A DNA stretch of 64,000 bases from Octopus sinensis (lineage: Eukaryota). The position numbers and the translations under genes are program-made. Under the pieces are notes generated by a model. That model was given only the letters and a program-made list of their open reading frames with translations. It was not told the origin of the DNA and did no database searches. The stretch is taken from assembly GCF_006345805.1 (NCBI RefSeq), contig NC_043012.1, positions 54,994,001 to 55,058,000 on the forward strand, written 5' to 3'. Of this stretch, positions 35,262 through 60,124 are shown piece after piece; within the stretch, counting starts at the first letter, position 1; every line of letters starts with the position of its first letter.

Positions 35262-36546
35262 CGAGGGGCGTTCAATAAGTAATGCCCCTGACCCACTTCC
35301 CATAGCAGTAGAGCAACGAAACTTGGCACAGTTATTAGTCTTTTTCTACATAGGAACCACCCAGAGTTACGCATTTCTCCCATCGTTTGATGTGGCTCTG
35401 AAGACCGTTTTTGTAGAAGAACCCAGCTTGGTCCTCCAACCTCAACATGACTTCAGAAATCAAGGCTGCATCATCTGGGAAATGCTTTCCTTTCAAAAAC
35501 AACTTCATGATTAGGAAGAGGTGAAAATCAGAGGGTGCAAGGTCAGGAAAGTAGGGGGGATGGGAAGGAATTCATAGCCATACGTCTGTGCTTCTGATCT
35601 GGCGACAAGCGAGTTGTGGACCGGAGCGTTGTCCTGCAGGAGGAGGATGCCTTTGCTGATCTTGCCCCGCCTCTTGATTTTGATAACTTCTCTTAATTTC
35701 CTCAAAAGTGAAGCATAATAGGCTCCTGTAATTGTGGTACCCTTTGCCAGGAAATCTGTCATCACTACTCCGTCCTGGTCCCAGAAGACTGTGAGCATGA
35801 CCTTGCCAGTGGAGGGCTGCACCCTTGCCTTCTTTGGAGGGGGTGAGTCACGGTGCTTCCACTGCATTGACTGGGATTTGGTCTCTGGATCATCGTGATG
35901 GACCCAGGTTTCATCCTGTATAATCAGTCTTTTGAAAAATTTTGACTCATCTTCTTGGCACATCTCCAAATTCACCCTCGAGCACTCAACGTGTTCTTGC
36001 TTCTGGAAAGGCATGAGCAGCCTGGGAATCCATCTGACAGACACCTTTTGCATATGCAAATGGTCATGAATGATAGTTTCCACAGACCTGGTACTAATCT
36101 TGATCTCATGGGCTATTTGGCGAATAATTATGCGTCGATCTTCCAAAATGGCAGCCTCAACTTGACGGACAGATGCCTCATCAATGGCAGAAGGGGGCGA
36201 CCAGATCTGGGAGCTGTTTCCACAGAGTTCCGACCATGTTTGAATTCATGATGCCAGCGTTTTACAAGGTCATATGATGGGGCATCATCACCATAAGTTA
36301 CTTTCATTTCATCAAAAGTCTCCCGTGGTGTGCGTCCTTTCAAATACAAAAACCGGATCACTGCTCGACACTCAACAAGCTCCATTTCACACTTGACTCG
36401 GTTCAAACACCTGTAAATCAGAAACCACAATTAATTCAGAGCTGTAATTTGCCACTTACTCTATAGAGATATAAATGATTGCACATGCAAAATTTCAGCT
36501 AGATTAAACAAGTGGGTCAGAGGCATTACTTATTGAACGTCCCTCG
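35262..36546 (-). mobile_element. Full-length mariner transposon (1285 bp)
   Basis: 37-bp TIRs at 35262-35298 and 36510-36546 (2 mismatches), with TA on both flanks. Confidence 0.96.
35335..36385 (-). pseudogene. Mariner DD34D transposase with two frameshifts
   Basis: MELVECRAVIRFL, WIPRLL, IQDETW, LQDNAP, HPPYFPDLAPSD. There are 34 residues between the second and third Asp. Confidence 0.93.
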
Positions 36547-45230: not shown

Positions 45231-45638
45231 ATACATACACACACACACACGTCCATTTCATATATCTTTCAATTTCTGCTCTCTGCAAATAACATTTTTT
45301 ATGGATACAACTGCTTACAAAAATAGGGATTAATATATAATATCTTTCTATGTTCATAATTAAATCAATGTTTTAATGATTAGACAGAGGTCCAATAGAA
45401 TAGCTTTCAGAAACAGACTATGTACAAATTCATTCTTCACAACTTCTGAAGCTGTTTTCTGACAAGGGGTGGGGGAATCAGGAAATTTTCATACAGCTGA
45501 AGGTTCCAATCGAAACAGGGAACCCGAACTGATAAGGTTAAGAAATGCTGTTATAGATGAAATGCTGTAATGATCACAGCCACATCATCCAAACAGACCA
45601 GGTGAAACTGGGCTTAGCTGCTAGTATATATATATATA

Positions 45639-46254
45639 TTTCATGGGAAACATGTATTTTCGTGGTTGAAACCTTTTGGATTAACTGGTGCTAGAGTGAT
45701 CAATATAGTGACCACTCTCTTATATTTATTTTGTGAAAATATTATAATATGTTATAAAATATTATAATAATCCAGGTTTCTCGTAGCACTAGGCCACTTG
45801 GTGTGGAATAAATATACTATTAAATTAGTATCTAATTCTCTCACCCTTATTAATTAATTATAATTATGCTGCATTTATTTCTAAATGCTGTATTTGTTTC
45901 CGTGAGAGTTTGGCGCGCTGTTGGTTGGGGCATTTGAATTATAACGTCGGATGTAATCAATTGAACCACACGCGTATTTATCGTTATGGTAAAATCTGGC
46001 GTGTGATGAGTGGATTTCATCCAGATAGTCTTGGCTGACGAGCTACAAATGGATTATTGTAAGTAATATTACATTTAATTCATTAATAGCGAAACAATTG
46101 TCCCAAAATAATCTGTATTTTTGTTATTTTTTATTTGCCCTGTCCGTGTGAGCTAACAGTCGTACTTGGCTTTCATGGGAAACATGTATTTTCGTGGTTG
46201 AAACCTTTTGGATTAACTGGTGCTAGAGTGATCAATATAGTGACCACTCTCTTA

Positions 46255-46261
<7 letters not shown>
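45639..46261 (+). mobile_element. ORF-less hammerhead-carrying element (retrozyme-like or non-autonomous PLE)
   Basis: Identical 91-nt direct repeats at 45639-45729 and 46171-46261 (period 532 nt), (TA)n on both sides, canonical HHR inside. Confidence 0.8.
46031..46106 (+). ncRNA. Canonical type I hammerhead ribozyme motif
   Basis: TTGG-CTGACGA-GCTA...TAGC-GAA-ACAATTGT-C-CCAA. All core nucleotides are present, G10.1-C11.1 pair, long stem II (AATGGA/TTCATT, TGTAA/TTACA), GUC site, predicted cut after 46102. Confidence 0.85.
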
Positions 46262-46298
<37 letters not shown>

Positions 46299-50401: not shown

Positions 50402-52868
50402 TGTGTCCTAGGAGAGCAATGTGTCCTAGGAGAGAAATGTGTCCTTTAGGAGAGAAATGTGTCCTAGGAGAGAAATGTATCCGTATGGATGATGGTTCAC
50501 TTGCCCTAAATGAGGCTGCAAAGAGAGAGGTTTGGAGATGCCACTATGAAAGGCTGCTCAATAAAGAGAATCAATGGGAGAAAGAGAGTCTGCCAAATGT
50601 CGACCCAACAGAGGGACCAGCTATCCAAATTGACAGTACCTTGGTAGTTAAAGCAATCAAGAGTATGAAGGCAGGGAAAGCCCCGGGCCCATCAGGAATC
50701 ACTGCAGAGATGCTCAAAATATCTGGCAGTGTCGGCTATAGCCTAGTCACCTGCATAGTTAACCAGGTGATACACGAAGGAGTCATACCCAATGACTCGT
50801 GTAGCAACACCATAGTCAACTGCTACAAAGGTAAAGGTGACGCCTTAGATACAAATAATTACAGAGGTATCAAGTTGCTGGTTCAAGTAATGAAGGTCAT
50901 GGAGAGGATCATAGGTCAACTAATTAGAGAGAGAGAGTCAGTTTAGATGAAATGCAGTTTGGGTTCGTGCCAGGGAAAAGCACCACTGATGCTATATTCC
51001 TGGTAAGACAGCTGCAGGAGAAATACCTAGCCAAAGATAAACCTCTGTACTTGGCTTTCGTTGACATGGAAAAAGCCTTTGACAGGTTCCCCCGATCCCT
51101 TATCTGGTGGTCAATGAGGAAACTAGGGATAGATGAATGGTTAGTGAGAGCTGTGCGAGCCATGTACAGGGACGCTGTTAGTAAGGTGAGGGTTGGTAAC
51201 GAATACAATGAAGAATTCCGGGTAGAGGTAGGGGTCCACCAAGGTTCAGTCCTCAGCCCCCTCCTAATTATCATAGTTCTCCAGGCAATAACAGAGGAAT
51301 TCAAGACTGGATGCCCCTGGGAGCTCCTCTATGCTGATGACCTTGCTCTATTTGCTGAGTCACTATCAGAACTAGAGGAGAAGTTTCAGGTGTGGAAGCA
51401 AGGATTAGAATCGAAAGGCCTTAGAGTCAACCTAGCTAAAACAAAAGTCCTAATAAGTAGGAAGGTAGACAAACCACAAACGCCTTCAGGTAGATGGCCC
51501 TGCTCGATCTGTAGAAAAGGCATAGGTAGAAACTCTATAAGATGTACCTAATGTAAGCTATGGACACATAAGAGGTGCAGCAATGTCAAAGGAAGGCTAA
51601 CTGGGAAGATAGTTTTTGTATGTGGCAGATGCTCAGGAGCAATAAACACTGAAAATCTGCAGAAAACAACTTCCGTCACTTTCCAGGGAGAAAAACTAGA
51701 AGTAGTTGATAGCTTCCGTTACCTAGGTGACCAAGTCAGTAGCGGGGGCAGGTGTGCTGAAAGTGTAACTGCTAGAGTAAGAATAACCTGGGCAAAGTTC
51801 AAAGAGCTCTTACCTCTGCTGGTGACAAAAGGCCTCTCGCTCAGAGTAAAAGGCAGATTGTATGACGCATGTGTACAAACAGCCATGCTACATGGCAGTG
51901 AAACATGGGCCGTGATTGCTGAGGACATGCGTAAGCTCACGAGGAATGAAGCCAGTATGCTCCGATGGATGTGTAATGTCAGTGTACATACTTGACAGTG
52001 TAAGTACCCTGAGAGAAAAGTTAGATCTAAGAAGCATCAGCTGTGGTGTGCAAGAGAGATGATTGGGCTGGTATGGTCATGTGGCGAGAATGGATGAAGA
52101 TAGTTGTGTGAAAAAGTTCCAATCCCTAGTGGTTGAGGGAACCTGTGGAAGAGGTAGACCCAGGAAAACCTGGGACGAGGTGGCGAAGCACGACCTTCGA
52201 ACATTAGGCCTCACCAAGGCAATGACTAGTGACCGAGACCTTTGGAAATATGCTGTGCGTGAGAAGACCTGGCAGGACAAGTGAGACCATCTCGTGGCCT
52301 TTGCCAGGGATGTAGCCAGCCCACTTATCCATGCCTTTCCTTCTTTGGACACATGAAGACCTGTTGAGGCAAGAGAAGTCGAAATTGAATTCGAAATCGA
52401 ACCTCATCCGACGACTGGCACCCGGCAGTTGCCAGTGCTGCTGGACTGACTCCTGTACAGGTGGCAAGTAAAGAAACCGTTTCGACTCTGTGTTTGAGGA
52501 GGCCTATTGAGTCAAGTACATCAACATCAAAAATCAATGGAAATTGTAGTTGTGATCCCTGTGCTGGTGGCACGTAAAAAGCACCATCCGAACGTGGCTG
52601 ATGTTAGCGCCACCTTGACTGGCTTCCGTGCCGGTGGCATGTAAAAAGCACCAACTGATCGTGGCCATTGCCAGCCTCACCTAGCACGTAAAAAGCACCC
52701 ACTACACTCACGGAGTGGTTGGCATTAGGAAGGACATCCAGCTGTAGAAACACTGCCAGATCAGACTGGAGCCTGGTGCAGCCTTCTGGCTTCCCAGATC
52801 CCCGGTCGAACCGTCCAACCCATGCTAGCATGGAAAACGGACGTTAAACGATGATGATGATGATGATG
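50402..52868 (+). mobile_element. 5'-truncated RTE-clade LINE with RT domain, 3' UTR and (GAT)n tail
   Basis: [54 protein letters not shown] +2 slip in (GA)n near 50930 and an in-frame TAA at 51549. Confidence 0.95.
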
Positions 52869-54204: not shown

Positions 54205-54282
<78 letters not shown>

Positions 54283-54319
54283 GTGTGTGTATTTATATAT
54301 GTATTTATATATATATGTG

Positions 54320-54350
<31 letters not shown>

Positions 54351-54408
54351 CTATATATATATATATATATATAAATAAACGAGAAAAAAGCAACAAGAAT
54401 GGATTAGT

Positions 54409-54499
54409 TTTTAGTACAATTGTTTCATACAAAGACAGGCTTTATTAAAAGTTGCAAAAATTGCAGCAGATAAAAGTGTCCCGTACTCATCAGCTAAAA
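54409..54499 (-). ncRNA. Type I hammerhead in the PLE 3' terminal region
   Basis: TTTTAG-CTGATGA-GTACGGGACA...TGTCTTTGTAT-GAA-ACAATTGT-A-CTAAAA. 6-bp stem I, palindromic stem III, GUA site. Confidence 0.82.
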
Positions 54500-55887
54500 T
54501 ACATGTGAGTTCTCCAAACATCTTAGTGGGTGAGGCTATACTCATGAAGTATTGGAGATAATTTCATTAAAAGCAGATTTAGGTTGTAAACAGATTTCCG
54601 AAGTTCCTATATGATGATGCACAGTCTTATCACAGGTTTTTAAAAGAAGCTTATTAGCTTCACAGAGAAGGTGAATTAATCCGTAGTGTAGATGTAAATT
54701 TCCAGAGATATGAATTTATCCATGGTTAATCCACAATGAGGTGGGTATCATTCATGCTATATGATAAGGTATTTGCCACATTACTACCCTCTTCACAAGA
54801 CTGCTAAGTTATGACTTCTAAAGGCTGAAGGAATTTTTGTGGAGCAAAGAAAAGAAAAGAAAAAAGAAAAAGAAAAGAAAGGAAAGAGAAGAAAAGAGAC
54901 AATGGAAAAGGAAAAGAAAAAAGAAAAAGGAAAAGAAAAAAGAAAAAGAAAAGAAAGGAAAGAGAAGAAAAGAGACAATGGAAAAGGAAATAGAAAAAAA
55001 GAAAGAAGGAAAAAAGAAAAGGAAAAAAGAAAAAAGGGGAGAAGAAAAGAAAAAAGAAAAAGAAAAAGAAAAGGAAAAAAAAGGAAAAAAAGGGGAAAGA
55101 AAAAAGGGGAAGAAGGGAGCAAAGAAAAAACGCCCACATAGAGTATACTGTGACAACTTAGAGGGAAGGGGTTTTTAAAGTGACTTACTACACAGAAGAA
55201 TTTGTAGACGGCCTGGCTGGCTTGAATTTGCAAGAATCCAGGAACTATAAGGAGAATATTATTTTTGACCAGTTAAAACAGCTATTTTATTGCTAACCTG
55301 ACGTAGTTGAAAGCAGATATGAATCTACAGAGAATCTAAAGAGATAACAAGGTCAGAGGTAGAGGGGTCAAAGGCTATCATAAAAAGGAAATACATTAAG
55401 AGAAGAAATCTAAGTGCATTCCTAACAAGAGGTCATTTAAATTTATTTATTTATTTATTCCTGTTACTGTCTTAAATTGTTGCCGCTACTATCAATACAT
55501 TGACAGACTACAGGTCAAAACTTAGAAGTTAGTTATATTGAAATTTCTCATACTACTTTCATGGGAGTAGCCTTACTTATTTAATTTTGTAATAGAATTA
55601 TGAAGCCTAAGTAACTTATTTTATTAAAGTTGTGTTACCTAAATTAGATTAAATTCAAAATTCAAAATTAAAATTAAGAATTTAAAATTAAATAAAACTT
55701 CATTTAAGCAACGTACAAGTACTATTTATTTCCTTATGCTCGAAATCAGGTGCAGTTTATAAAGAAAAAGATAACTATAGTGTGAGAAACTCGCAGTTAT
55801 CTACTTAAAAATTAAAGTAATGCTATACTAGTAAAAACCAAGCTATATCTATCTATCTATCTTGTTACGATTATTCTATACAGTTAT

Positions 55888-57014
55888 TCATTTAAAATAT
55901 TTTAGAGTCTTCAATTTAGCGTGGACACAAACCTGACCTACTTCAATATGATTATTTAACAAACCTCTATTTTTTCTGTCTTAGAATTTCATAGGTCTCC
56001 ATAGAGCAGAGTTGGCAACCAACCCTGTTATTTTTATACGGCATTGCTCTCCTAACTATTTCCCAAATAAGGTTATAATTCCTGTTATTATTTTTGAGTT
56101 CCCAGATCTTACTTGAAAGTGTGGTGGTACCAGCTTTATGACGTAATTTAAAAGATGAGACGTGATTTCTAACTCTGCTTTTAAAATTTATCGTACAACC
56201 AATATAAAAATATTTGTTATTCTCAGTAGATATGGTACATTTATAGATTACGTTATTTTCCCCGCATAGACCAGGTGCCGGGTATTTTGACTTAATTCTA
56301 CACTTACATGCAGGAGGAACAACTTCAGATGTTGGATTATTCATGGGTAGATGTCTTATGTTCCTGTTATTTTGATTATCATGAGTATAATTATCTTTAT
56401 TATTATTATTATTTTTATAGTTGGTACTGTTATGTAAAGCATTGTTATTATTTATTGATCCTTCTGCTCCATCTTTTAGGTCTAAAGTCCTACCATGATT
56501 ATTTACATTATTGGTAATGTATTATTATTGCTAGTATTTTTATCTGACTGTATATTGTTGTTATAGATATCACTGATATTTTCATTCTCTGTATTTTGTC
56601 TATTAGCCTTACTTCTATTATTAACATTATTACTTCTATTAATATCGATACTATTATTACTCCTATTAATGTTAATATTATTATTAGTCATTCTGTGGTT
56701 ACTGATTCCATCCATGTTATGATAGTTACTATTGTTGCATTTATTGTTGGTAGTATTATTATAATTGTTATTGGTATTCATGTTGGTATTATTATTTTTA
56801 TTTCTATCTTTCCTGGCTAGCTTAATGTTGTTATTATTAATCTTAGCTATTAAAGTGGACATATTTGGGAGGGTTGAATAGAAAATCCTAACTGTTTTCT
56901 TAGAAATAATTCTATGATATCTGTGAGAGATTGGGAAATTTTTTTCTAGAAATACTTTGAATTTGCTCTGTATATCCGATTGAATCGCACAGTTGAAAGG
57001 AATATTCAGCCATA
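55888..57014 (-). pseudogene. PLE C-terminal ORF (linker plus GIY-YIG endonuclease), frameshifted
   Basis: ORF track 56503-57072 and 55967-56344. A frame-corrected end reads ...NRGLLNNHIEVGQVCVHAKLKTLKYFK*. Confidence 0.85.
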
Positions 57015-57199
57015 TTGTACTAAAAACTAATCCATTCTTGTTGCTTTTTTCTCGTTTATAATCACCCCACATTACTGTATGGTTAACACCATATAGTTTT
57101 CTGGTGCATCTAAGTTAAGTACCGTATTCAAGTAAATTCATTAGAATGACTTGAATCTTAATTGCTTTTATATATATAATATATATATATAATATATAT

Positions 57200-57261
<62 letters not shown>

Positions 57262-57302
57262 ATATATGTGTGTGTATTTATATGTATTTATATATATATG
57301 TG

Positions 57303-57359
<57 letters not shown>

Positions 57360-57364
<5 letters not shown>

Positions 57365-59960
57365 CGAGAAAAAAGCAACAAGAATGGATTAGTTTTTAGT
57401 ACAATTGTTTCATACAAAGACAGGCTTTATTAAAAGTTGCAAAAATTGCAGCAGATAAAAGTGTCCCGTACTCATCAGCTAAAATACATGTGAGTTCTCC
57501 AAACATCTTAGTGGGTGAGGCTATACTCATGAAGTATTGGAGATAATTTCATTAAAAGCAGATTTAGGTTGTAAACAGATTTCCGAAGTTCCTATATGAT
57601 GATGCACAGTCTTATCACAGGTTTTTAAAAGAAGCTTATTAGCTTCACAGAGAAGGTGAATTAATCCGTAGTGTAGATGTAAATTTCCAGAGATATGAAT
57701 TTATCCATGGTTAATCCACAATGAGGTGGGTATCATTTCATGCTATATGATAAGGTATTTGCCACATTACTACCCTCTTCACAAGACTGCTAAGTTATGA
57801 CTTCTAAAGGCTGAAGGAATTTTTTGTGGAGCAAAGAAAAGAAAAGAAAGGAAAGAGAAGAAAAGAGACAATGGAAAAGGAAATAGAAAAAAAGAAAGAA
57901 GGAAAAAAGAAAAAGGAAAAAAGAAAAAAGGAAAAGAAAAAAGAAAAAAGGGGAGAAGAAAAGAAAAAGAAAAGGAAAAAAAAAAGGAAAAAAAGGGGAA
58001 AGAAAAAAGGGGAAGAAGGGAGCAAAGAAAAAACGCCCACATAGAGTATACTGTGACAACTTAGAGGGAAGGGGTTTTTAAAGTGACTTACTACACAGAA
58101 GAATTTGTAGACGGCCTGGCTGGCTTGAATTTGCAAGAATCCAGGAACTATAAGGAGAATATTATTTTTGACCAGTAAAACAGCTATTTTATTGCTAACC
58201 TGACGTAGTTGAAAGCAGATATGAATCTACAGAGAATCTAAAGAGATAACAAGGTCAGAGGTAGAGGGGTCAAAGGCTATCATAAAAAGGAAATACATTA
58301 AGAGAAGAAATCTAAGTGCATTCCTAACAAGAGGTCATTTAAATTTATTTATTTATTTATTCCTGTTACTGTCTTAAATTGTTGCCGCTACTATCAATAC
58401 ATTGACAGACTACAGGTCAAAACTTAGAAGTTAGTTATATTGAAATTTCTCATACTACTTTCATGGGAGTAGCCTTACTTATTTAATTTTGTAATAGAAT
58501 TATGAAGCCTAAGTAACTTATTTTATTAAAGTTGTGTTACCTAAATTAGATTAAATTCAAAATTCAAAATTAAAATTAAGAATTTAAAATTAAATAAAAC
58601 TTCATTTAAGCAACGTACAAGTACTATTTATTTCCTTATGCTCGAAATCAGGTGCAGTTTATAAAGAAAAAGATAACTATAGTGTGAGAAACTCGCAGTT
58701 ATCTACTTAAAAATTAAAGTAATGCTATACTAGTAAAAACCAAGCTATATCTATCTATCTATCTTGTTACGATTATTCTATACAGTTATTCATTTAAAAT
58801 ATTTTAGAGTCTTCAATTTAGCGTGGACACAAACCTGACCTACTTCAATATGATTATTTAACAAACCTCTATTTTTTTCTGTCTTAGAATTTCATAGGTC
58901 TCCATAGAGCAGAGTTGGCAACCAACCCTGTTATTTTTATACGGCATTGCTCTCCTAACTATTTCCCAAATAAGGTTATAATTCCTGTTATTATTTTTGA
59001 GTTCCCAGATCTTACTTGAAAGTGTGGTGGTACCAGCTTTATGACGTAATTTAAAAGATGAGACGTGATTTCTAACTCTGCTTTTAAAATTTATCGTACA
59101 ACCAATATAAAAATATTTGTTATTCTCAGTAGATATGGTACATTTATAGATTACGTTATTTTCCCCGCATAGACCAGGTGCCGGGTATTTTGACTTAATT
59201 CTACACTTACATGCAGGAGGAACAACTTCAGATGTTGGATTATTCATGGGTAGATGTCTTATGTTCCTGTTATTTTGATTATCATGAGTATAATTATCTT
59301 TATTATTATTATTATTTTTATAGTTGGTACTGTTATGTAAAGCATTGTTATTATTTATTGATCCTTCTGCTCCATCTTTTAGGTCTAAAGTCCTACCATG
59401 ATTATTTACATTATTGGTAATGTTATTATTATTGCTAGTATTTTTATCTGACTGTATATTGTTGTTATAGATATCACTGATATTTTCATTCTCTGTATTT
59501 GTCTATTAGCCTTACTTCTATTATTAACATTATTACTTCTATTAATATCGATACTATTATTACTCCTATTAATGTTAATATTATTATTAGTCATTCTGTG
59601 GTTACTGATTCCATCCATGTTATGATAGTTACTATTGTTGCATTATTGTTGGTAGTATTATTATAATTGTTATTGGTATTCATGTTGGTATTATTATTTT
59701 TATTTCTATCTTTCCTGGCTAGCTTAATGTTGTTATTATTAATCTTAGCTATTAAAGTGGACATATTGGGAGGGTTGAATAGAAAATCCTAACTGTTTTC
59801 TTAGAAATAATTCTATGATATCTGTGAGAGATTGGGAAATTTTTTTCTAGAAATACTTTGAATTTGCTCTGTATATCCGATTGAATCGCACAGTTGAAAG
59901 GAATATTCAGCCATATTGTACTAAAAACTAATCCATTCTTGTTGCTTTTTTCTCGTTTAT
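57360..59960 (-). mobile_element. 5'-truncated Penelope-like element, copy 2 (tandem duplicate)
   Basis: Near-identical to copy 1. Terminal inverted repeat at 57360-57405 and 59915-59960. Confidence 0.9.
57394..57484 (-). ncRNA. Type I hammerhead in PLE copy 2
   Basis: Same motif as 54409-54499, offset 2985. Confidence 0.82.
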
Positions 59961-60083
59961 AATCACCCCACATTACTGTATGGTTAACACCATATAGTTT
60001 TCTGGTGCATCTAAGTTAAGTACCGTATTCAAGTAAATTCATTAGAATTGACTTGAATCTTAATTGCTTTTATATATATAATA

Positions 60084-60124
<41 letters not shown>

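What the first reader, a model, noticed from the sequence alone, without database searches (positions are those of the whole stretch)
45639..46261. Young ORF-less 532-nt repeat unit carrying a fully canonical hammerhead (retrozyme-like element)
Seen: a 623-bp insert between two (TA)n tracts whose first and last 91 nt are identical, which equals one 532-nt monomer plus terminal redundancy. It contains TTGG-CTGACGA-GCTA-[hairpin of about 40 nt]-TAGC-GAA-ACAATTGT-C-CCAA, with every core base, a G-C pair closing stem II and a GUC site. There is no ORF and no TIR. Established: metazoan non-LTR retrozymes and PLE terminal repeats carry type I HHRs with palindromic stem III, and tandem copies yield unit-length or circular RNAs. 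Inference: a recently mobile, non-autonomous ribozyme retroelement that may produce a circular RNA of about 532 nt and borrow PLE enzymes. The long structured stem II differs from the usual minimal PLE hammerhead.
Basis: partly seen in the sequence, partly recalled or inferred. Interest (0 to 1): 0.92.

Follow-up and report, generated by a model that had tools for sequence, protein, structure and literature searches.

The report
Octopus hammerhead retrozyme, Penelope-style insertion
This is one young copy of a non-coding 532-base octopus repeat that carries a self-cutting hammerhead RNA motif, a new member of the already known "retrozyme" class, and its copies show in unusual detail the insertion marks left by Penelope-like jumping genes.

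Summary
Window 45639-46261 is a 623-bp insert in a (TA)n tract, equal to 1.17 units of a 532-nt ORF-less repeat. It has one complete type I hammerhead core (cut predicted after 46102).

It belongs to a family with at least 1,757 hammerhead-bearing units in this roughly 2.7-Gb genome, which is probably Octopus sinensis. The units are 95-100% alike.

In 31 loci read, every insertion lies in (TA)n. Each has a variable 5' end and one of only two 3' ends: A (unit position 89-92) or B (position 222). Twenty-seven loci are head-to-head pairs of tandem arrays, and each pair has one A end and one B end. Twelve further pairs classified from coordinates alone follow the same rule (39 of 39).

These marks match those published for Penelope-like elements (PLEs): two internal reverse-transcription start sites, a "tail" at one end, both DNA strands extended, and AT-rich targets. 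A PLE copy 8 kb away in the window has a hammerhead with the same helix III.

Verdict: a new member of the known class of PLE-dependent non-LTR retrozymes. Earlier reports of this scan describe at least eight similar arrays elsewhere in this genome. Circular RNA and cleavage remain untested. This copy, with one hammerhead, cannot release a unit by itself.

The parts
45625..45639 (.). (TA)n on the 5' side of the insertion (target microsatellite)
45639..46261 (+). The insertion: 1.17 units of the 532-nt retrozyme, a single arm. Its 5' end falls at an arbitrary unit position and its 3' end at start site A.
45639..45729 (+). First copy of the 91-nt terminal redundancy. It ends at the internal copy of site A (unit position 89).
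46171..46261 (+). Second copy of the 91-nt redundancy. Its last bases (...cttatatttat) are terminus A, the 3' end of the insertion.
45850..45862 (+). Internal copy of site B (...ttaattaattata, unit position 222), the alternative 3' terminus used by other insertions. The roughly 130 nt between A and B (45730-45862) correspond to the PLE 'tail'.
   Evidence: PMC11167929
46031..46106 (+). Type I hammerhead motif: helix I 46031-34/46103-06, core 46035-41, helix II 46042-90, GAA 46091-93, palindromic helix III 46094-101, C17 at 46102 (cut predicted after it).
46262..46295 (.). (TA)n on the 3' side of the insertion
54226..60112 (-). Penelope-like element copy, a candidate relative of the mobilising element. 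Two nearly identical units of about 2.9 kb, each ending in hammerhead, then ctcgtttat, then (TA)n.
55970..56521 (-). GIY-YIG endonuclease frame of that PLE (184 aa). Its second copy is at 58873-59421.
57394..57484 (-). Hammerhead of the PLE, with the same helix III ACAATTGT. Its second copy is at 54409-54499.
57014..57169 (-). A 46-nt inverted copy of the PLE's own 3' end (57014-57059), plus about 110 nt of extension ('tail') next to (TA)n. This is the same twin-arm, tail-at-one-end layout as the retrozyme.

Best explanation
Window 45639-46261 is a recent, dead-on-arrival insertion of a non-autonomous retroelement: a non-LTR retrozyme of about 532 nt. Family RNA, transcribed from arrays, carries one type I hammerhead per unit. 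Helix III of this hammerhead is a loopless palindrome, so the ribozyme can form only between two copies. It should therefore cut multimeric transcripts into units and stay inactive in a monomer, which host ligase could circularise (inferred, not shown). A Penelope-like element's RT/GIY-YIG protein cuts a (TA)n microsatellite. It then starts reverse transcription inside the RNA at one of two AU-rich sites: A (unit position 89-92) or B (position 222). It runs round a circular template, or along a multimeric one, for 0.1 to 11 or more units and stops at a random point. Usually both DNA ends are extended. This gives two head-to-head arrays with 3' ends pointing outward, joined by 0-4 nt of microhomology, with one end at A and the other at B. 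The window copy is the simpler one-arm product. Shown: the anatomy, copy number, youth, the termini rule, the (TA)n targets and a PLE with a related hammerhead nearby. Inferred: RNA cleavage, circularity, and which PLE does the work.
For: Family size: at least 277 full-length matches at 95-100% identity, and 888 + 869 hits to a 27-nt piece of the hammerhead against 0 in the control. Termini and targets: in 31 loci read, all lie in (TA)n, only the two 3' termini A and B occur, and 5' ends and inner junctions differ in every locus. Pairing rule: 27 of 27 twin-arm loci have one A and one B end. On contig C1, 14 of 14 pairs with both junctions classified are also hetero, 12 of them new, and no B/B pair exists. 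All 19 mixed clusters on C1 run minus then plus. Shared template: the arms of one locus share a 14-site haplotype in 13 of 16 cases, against 6% of random arm pairs. Homogeneous arrays: 70 of 73 variable sites within arrays are private to one unit, and within-array divergence is 0-0.8% against 1.63% between arrays. RNA features: no ORF; GC 33% and a circular fold z of -7; the hammerhead core is nearly invariant in 122 units; Rfam RF00163 gives 27.5 bits, E 2.9e-5. Covariation: helices I and II covary between this hammerhead, the one at L042 and the PLE's. PLE link: the PLE in the window has a GIY-YIG frame, the same helix III, a similar terminus, (TA)n, an inverted arm and a tail. Its endonuclease family has copies with 700-957-aa open frames. 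Published PLE behaviour matches: two internal RT start sites that define the tail, both strands cut and extended, AT-rich targets (PMC11167929); tail at one end, inverted 5'-truncated copies, (TA)n bias (PMC8557442); the retrozyme model (PMC7229834).
Against: No RNA evidence of quality. All runs that hold the unit are contigs of runs only guessed to be RNA, and one contig runs on into (TA)n as genomic DNA would. Cleavage is untested. The minimum-energy fold of the motif is an alternative pairing (GACGA with UUGUC), not the active fold. There is no covariation inside the family, which is too young. Sequence similarity to the neighbouring PLE is limited to the hammerhead's 3' half plus about 30 nt (44 nt at 77%, E 0.001). 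The wider local alignment is not above shuffles. Two clusters on C1 (near 25.69 Mb and 79.1 Mb) have an arm that passes site A while the other end is B. I could not resolve them.
Confidence: 0.82

Rival explanations
1. Same element and same enzyme, but the template is a long linear multimeric transcript of a genomic array, not a monomeric circle. This is the scenario proposed for the anole PLE.
For: PMC11167929 proposes multi-copy mRNA as the PLE template and found hammerhead cleavage unnecessary in vitro. One contig of a possible RNA run reads from the unit through terminus B into (TA)n.
Against: A linear multimer offers many A and many B sites, so A/A and B/B pairs should occur, yet 39 of 39 classified pairs are A/B. 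Arrays are homogeneous: 70 of 73 variable sites are private to one unit. A palindromic helix III should make multimers self-cut (PMC4209133).
Confidence: 0.3
2. A satellite DNA that spreads at the DNA level (unequal crossing-over, extrachromosomal circles reinserted), with the hammerhead as a passenger.
For: Tandem arrays. Classical newt and cricket hammerhead 'satellites' were first read this way.
Against: There are hundreds of dispersed small insertions, some as short as 0.13 unit. They have fixed 3' ends, random 5' ends, an obligatory minus-then-plus order and (TA)n targets. DNA-level amplification predicts none of these features.
Confidence: 0.05
3. The copies are only truncated 3' ends (pLTR pieces) of a coding PLE, not an independent family.
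For: PLE insertions are heavily 5'-truncated, and hammerheads sit in pLTRs (PMC8557442).
Against: The unit closes on itself at 526-535 nt in every array, up to 11 units read and at least 17 by spacing. No frame exceeds 69 codons. No coding sequence adjoins any of the 31 loci in register. Only the hammerhead region resembles the PLE in the window.
Confidence: 0.04
4. Mobilised by a LINE rather than a PLE.
For: LINE RT fragments lie in several flanks (window 50928-51548).
Against: There is no poly(A) or LINE-type tail. Twin arms with a tail at one end and (TA)n targeting are described for PLEs, not LINEs (PMC8557442, PMC11167929). The hammerhead type is the PLE/retrozyme one.
Confidence: 0.03

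Closest known systems
Metazoan non-LTR retrozymes (Cervera & de la Pena 2020, PMC7229834; Li, Clavereau & Pollet 2026 preprint, 10.64898/2026.07.22.740005)
   Same: [quoted passage not shown] The RNA is predicted to be highly self-paired. Co-occurs with PLEs, and rolling-circle cDNA from a circular RNA has been proposed.
   Different: The unit is 532 nt, against the 150-450 nt (RNAs 170-400 nt) reported. Helix III is a loopless palindrome, helix I is short and helix II is very long. In the parts of those two papers I searched, inverted twin arms, two fixed termini and microsatellite targets are not mentioned. No cephalopod example turned up in the library.
Penelope-like elements and their insertion signature (Craig et al. 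2021, PMC8557442; Frangieh et al. 2024, PMC11167929)
   Same: 5' truncation, partial tandems, an inverted 5'-truncated copy, an extension ('tail') at only one end that equals the stretch between two internal RT start sites, both strands extended, AT-rich/(TA)n targets, and a hammerhead.
   Different: No RT or endonuclease gene. The tail is about 130 nt instead of 30-40. Arms hold many units. The strict one-A-one-B pairing is not stated in the papers read, and in vitro no difference in start site between strands was seen.
Minimal dimeric PLE hammerheads and the Schistosoma/newt type I hammerheads (Cervera & de la Pena 2014, PMC4209133; Rfam RF00163)
   Same: Core CUGAcGA...GAAAC...GUC, a G10.1-C11.1 pair, a palindromic helix III that needs a second copy, a 4-5 bp helix I and an enlarged helix II.
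   Different: Helix II carries a 41-nt insert (about 18 bp in all), which drops the Rfam score below the gathering threshold. There is no unpaired base between A9 and 10.1.

Membership tests
Hammerhead ribozyme, type I | Conserved core: C3 U4 G5 A6 N7 G8 A9, G12 A13 A14, A15.1-U16.1, H17 not G | tested here: met
   All present at 46035-41, 46091-94, 46101-02. Nearly invariant in 122 units.
Hammerhead ribozyme, type I | Three helices around the core, with helix I open | tested here: met
   Helix I has 4 bp and helix II about 18 bp. Helix III forms only as an 8-bp duplex between two copies, -6.4 kcal/mol.
Hammerhead ribozyme, type I | Rfam RF00163 at or above the gathering score (34 bits) | tested here: not met
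   27.5 bits, E 2.9e-5, full model, in a 121-nt search. No hit in wider searches.
Hammerhead ribozyme, type I | Helices supported by compensatory changes | tested here: inconclusive
   None inside the family. Helices I and II differ at every position yet still pair in two related elements, L042 and the window PLE. That is only three sequences.
Hammerhead ribozyme, type I | Self-cleavage after H17 | not testable with these tools
   Needs in vitro transcription of monomer and dimer.
Non-LTR retrozyme | Short non-coding tandem repeats, one type I hammerhead per unit, low GC, no LTR | tested here: met
   Arrays of 526-535-nt units, no ORF, GC 33%. PBS and PPT motifs were not searched for.
Non-LTR retrozyme | Expressed as linear and circular unit-length RNA | tested here: inconclusive
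   Contigs of three runs guessed to be RNA hold the unit: a 563-nt contig and a 'goes back 528' joint. Their nature as RNA is unproven, and circle and tandem cannot be told apart.
Non-LTR retrozyme | Dispersed, recently mobile copies | tested here: met
   31 independent loci with different flanks and junctions. Copies are up to 100% identical.
PLE-type integration | 5' truncation, partial tandem, adjacent inverted 5'-truncated copy | tested here: met
   27 of 31 loci are twin-armed. 19 of 19 mixed clusters on C1 run minus then plus.
PLE-type integration | Two internal RT start sites, with the tail at one end only | tested here: met
   Only termini A and B occur. 27 of 27 read pairs and 12 further pairs by coordinates are A/B.
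PLE-type integration | AT-rich or (TA)n target | tested here: met
   31 of 31 loci.
Autonomous Penelope-like element | Encodes RT and GIY-YIG endonuclease | tested here: not met
   No frame above 69 codons. It is non-autonomous.

The most novel reading that the evidence does not exclude
The strict one-A-one-B rule, the shared haplotype of the two arms and the multi-unit arms suggest a specific mechanism. Each insertion would be made by one PLE ribonucleoprotein, probably a dimer, holding a single monomeric circular RNA. Each protomer would prime from one cut DNA strand at one of the two start sites and copy the circle by rolling-circle reverse transcription. If so, this family is a natural genomic record of how PLEs generate their 'tail' and inverted repeats, and it would be in vivo evidence that a circular RNA is the template.
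Probability: 0.3. Interest if true: 0.6.

Novelty: new member of a known kind. Interest (0 to 1): 0.4.

Why it matters
Retrozymes are thought to depend on PLEs. In the papers I read, that rests on co-occurrence and on pLTR sequence similarity. This young, abundant octopus family adds a third line of evidence: its insertions carry the whole PLE integration signature at single-base resolution. They also obey a rule, one A and one B start site per insertion, that constrains models of PLE integration. The family is also a ready substrate for the in vitro PLE system. It is not a new kind of element.

Tried and rejected
- **Rfam searches.** Rfam at gathering score on the window, and at E up to 10 on 701 nt, gave no hammerhead. 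Only a 121-nt search gave the sub-threshold hit.
- **Covariation inside the family.** None, because the copies are too alike.
- **Thermodynamic folding.** The minimum-energy fold, monomer or dimer, is not the active fold, so folding neither supports nor refutes activity.
- **RNA runs.** Only contigs of runs guessed to be RNA were available. The flanks are themselves repeats, so flank depth could not separate RNA from DNA.
- **Search for the autonomous partner.**
  - I did not try to fetch the same genome through another tool.
  - My regular expression for PLE endonuclease motifs found nothing. It was too strict, since Pfam later found the GIY-YIG frame in the window.
  - The protein search returned one 205-aa Octopus sinensis protein only.
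- **Retrozyme versus the PLE 3' region.** The local alignment score of 48 is not above shuffles (mean 35, sd 6, maximum 61). Only a 44-nt stretch at 77% identity stands out.
- **Classical L1-type twin priming on a linear RNA.** This predicts arm 5' ends abutting the other arm's start site. It is rejected, because the 5' ends are scattered over the unit.
- **Arm-length asymmetry between A and B arms.** None: A is longer in 14 loci and B in 13.
- **Pattern for site-A junctions.** It also caught internal sites of a subfamily, so I sorted junctions by the printed letters.

Full report
**Observation**

Window 45639-46261 is a 623-bp block between (TA)n tracts. Its first and last 91 nt are identical, with a spacing of 532. 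It holds one hammerhead motif on the plus strand:
- helix I: TTGG (46031-34) paired with CCAA (46103-06);
- core: CTGACGA (46035-41);
- helix II: GCTA/TAGC closing a 41-nt, well-paired insert (46042-90);
- GAA (46091-93);
- helix III: the loopless palindrome ACAATTGT (46094-101);
- C17 at 46102.

A structural descriptor that I wrote finds three such sites in the window and none in 40 dinucleotide shuffles. Rfam Hammerhead_1 aligns 46029-46108 over its whole model at 27.5 bits, E 2.9e-5, when 121 nt are given. That is below its gathering score of 34, and the model is silent in wider searches. The 41-nt insert in helix II costs the score. The tandem unit has no frame above 69 codons.

**The family**

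The genome has 2.72 Gb. It is probably Octopus sinensis. The one protein relative found carries that name, and its contig has the same length as contig C5 of this genome. Earlier notes of this scan also say octopus.

The unit has at least 277 full-length matches at 95-100% identity. A 27-nt piece of the hammerhead occurs 888 + 869 times, against 0 for the control. A run of a second species label also holds the family, with a few fixed differences.

**Anatomy of insertions**

I read 31 independent loci. Positions below count from window 45641 as unit position 1.
- All 31 lie in (TA)n.
- Only two 3' termini exist. A ends ...ctcttatatttat(ttt) at position 89-92 and often has stuttered atttatttt extras. 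B ends ...cccttattaattaattata at position 222.
- The 5' ends are scattered over the whole unit.
- Twenty-seven loci are two tandem arrays placed head to head, with 3' ends pointing outward. Arms span 0.13 to 11 units, and each locus has a different inner junction with 0-4 nt of microhomology or a few filler bases.
- In all 27, one arm ends at A and the other at B.

Coordinates alone extend this. On contig C1, 14 of 14 insertions with both junctions classified are A/B, 12 of them new, and no B-minus junction is followed by a B-plus junction. All 19 mixed clusters there run minus then plus. If the two ends chose independently, 39 of 39 would have a probability of about 2e-12.

The two arms of a locus share the same 14-site haplotype in 13 of 16 cases. 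The other three look like alignment noise. Only 6% of random arm pairs match in this way. Within arrays, 70 of 73 variable sites are private to one unit. Within-array divergence is 0-0.8%, against 1.63% between arrays. The arrays were therefore uniform when made.

The window copy is one of four single-arm insertions. It has a random 5' end and an A terminus, and it is 99.8-100% identical to copies on other chromosomes.

**What it is**

These features match the published marks of Penelope-like elements:
- 5' truncation, partial tandems, an adjacent inverted 5'-truncated copy, an extension or 'tail' at only one end, and a (TA)n bias (PMC8557442);
- in vitro, cleavage and extension of both strands of AT-rich DNA, with reverse transcription starting at two internal sites whose interval is the tail (PMC11167929).

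Here the tail is the roughly 130 nt between A and B.

The element itself fits the non-LTR retrozyme class (PMC7229834; preprint 10.64898/2026.07.22.740005). It does not code, has 33% GC, is tandem and has one type I hammerhead per unit. Its predicted circular fold is far more stable than shuffles (-149.4 against -109 ± 5.7 kcal/mol, z = -7). Sites A and B both fall in or beside predicted loops.

The hammerhead is of the dimer-dependent kind described for PLEs (PMC4209133). The single-copy fold prefers an inactive pairing of GACGA with UUGUC.

**A candidate partner in the same window**

On the minus strand, 54226-60112 holds two nearly identical units of about 2.9 kb from a PLE copy. Its features are:
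- a GIY-YIG frame (Pfam PF01541);
- a hammerhead with the same helix III, ACAATTGT, and a 60-nt helix II insert (Rfam RF00163 at 19.4 bits);
- a 3' end ctcgtttat followed by (TA)n;
- a 46-nt inverted copy of its own 3' end, with an extension of about 110 nt next to (TA)n.

This is the same twin-arm, tail-at-one-end layout as the retrozyme. The endonuclease family is very large, and some copies sit in open frames of 700-957 aa. Autonomous relatives therefore probably exist.

Similarity between the retrozyme and this PLE is limited to the hammerhead's 3' half plus about 30 nt. I call it a candidate, not the parent.

A third, related hammerhead element lies beside a retrozyme insertion at L042 6305-6660. 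It shares the helix II loop sequence, and its helices I and II have different but still pairing sequences.

**Mechanism**

The best-supported account is target-primed reverse transcription by a PLE protein at a cut (TA)n tract. It starts at A or B, on a template that is circular or multimeric, because arms exceed one unit.

The A/B rule, the shared haplotype of the arms and the uniform arrays fit one RNA with exactly one A and one B site, that is a monomeric circle copied by rolling circle from both DNA ends. That step is inference. A linear multimer remains possible.

**What is not shown**

RNA expression, circularity and cleavage are all unproven. The only runs that hold the unit are contigs of runs guessed to be RNA. 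With one hammerhead, the window copy cannot release a unit by itself.

**Novelty**

The class is known. Earlier reports of this scan describe at least eight arrays of the same kind, with units of 475-550 bp, elsewhere in this genome.

Three things appear to be new here: a cephalopod family of 532 nt, the two fixed termini, and the strict pairing rule. I did not find the pairing rule in the papers read. My library search was limited, so this absence is weak evidence.

Noticed in passing
window 54226-60112 (minus strand): A Penelope-like element copy: two nearly identical units of about 2.9 kb, each with a GIY-YIG frame preceded by an asparagine-rich low-complexity frame. No RT is seen in the unit. 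It has a hammerhead, a 46-nt inverted arm and a tail of about 110 nt. Each unit includes about 200 bp of (TA)n, so the pair may be a later tandem duplication of a whole insertion.
   Followed up: partly
L042 6305-6660 (minus strand): A 355-nt element of a related hammerhead family sits in the same (TA)n tract, next to a retrozyme insertion. It ends ...catccctcttattgtat, a terminus motif like A and B. Its helix III (ACTGGGT) is not palindromic.
   Followed up: partly
A-type junctions, e.g. L002 about 1160-1181, L042 about 2840-2869, L031 about 2840-2872: Short repeats of atttatttt lie between terminus A and (TA)n, as if the enzyme re-copied a few template bases before moving on. This is reminiscent of the telomerase kinship of PLE reverse transcriptases.
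   Followed up: no
G000 C1 near 25,693,887-25,694,344 and 79,105,964-79,106,921: Two clusters where one end is B while the other arm reads through site A. They could be exceptions to the A/B rule or simply variant junctions. I could not read the DNA.
   Followed up: no
window 46037-46041 with 46098-46102: In a single copy, core bases GACGA pair with UUGUC (half of helix III plus C17). This gives an inactive fold more stable than the active one and may be a built-in switch that protects monomers.
   Followed up: partly
window 35514-36245 (minus) and 50928-51548 (plus): A mariner-type transposase fragment (Pfam PF01359) and a LINE reverse-transcriptase fragment (PF00078). Both are ordinary repeats.
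   Followed up: no
protein P0001: A 205-aa Octopus sinensis protein, 64% identical to the PLE endonuclease frame, is named 'myelin gene regulatory factor-like A' in the public record. This is probably a transposon fragment with a misleading name.
   Followed up: no
unit positions 60, 165, 416 and the 526-nt versus 532-nt units (loci L031-L050): At least three subfamilies are defined by linked variants. The variant common in the second species' DNA run matches the older subfamily here.
   Followed up: partly
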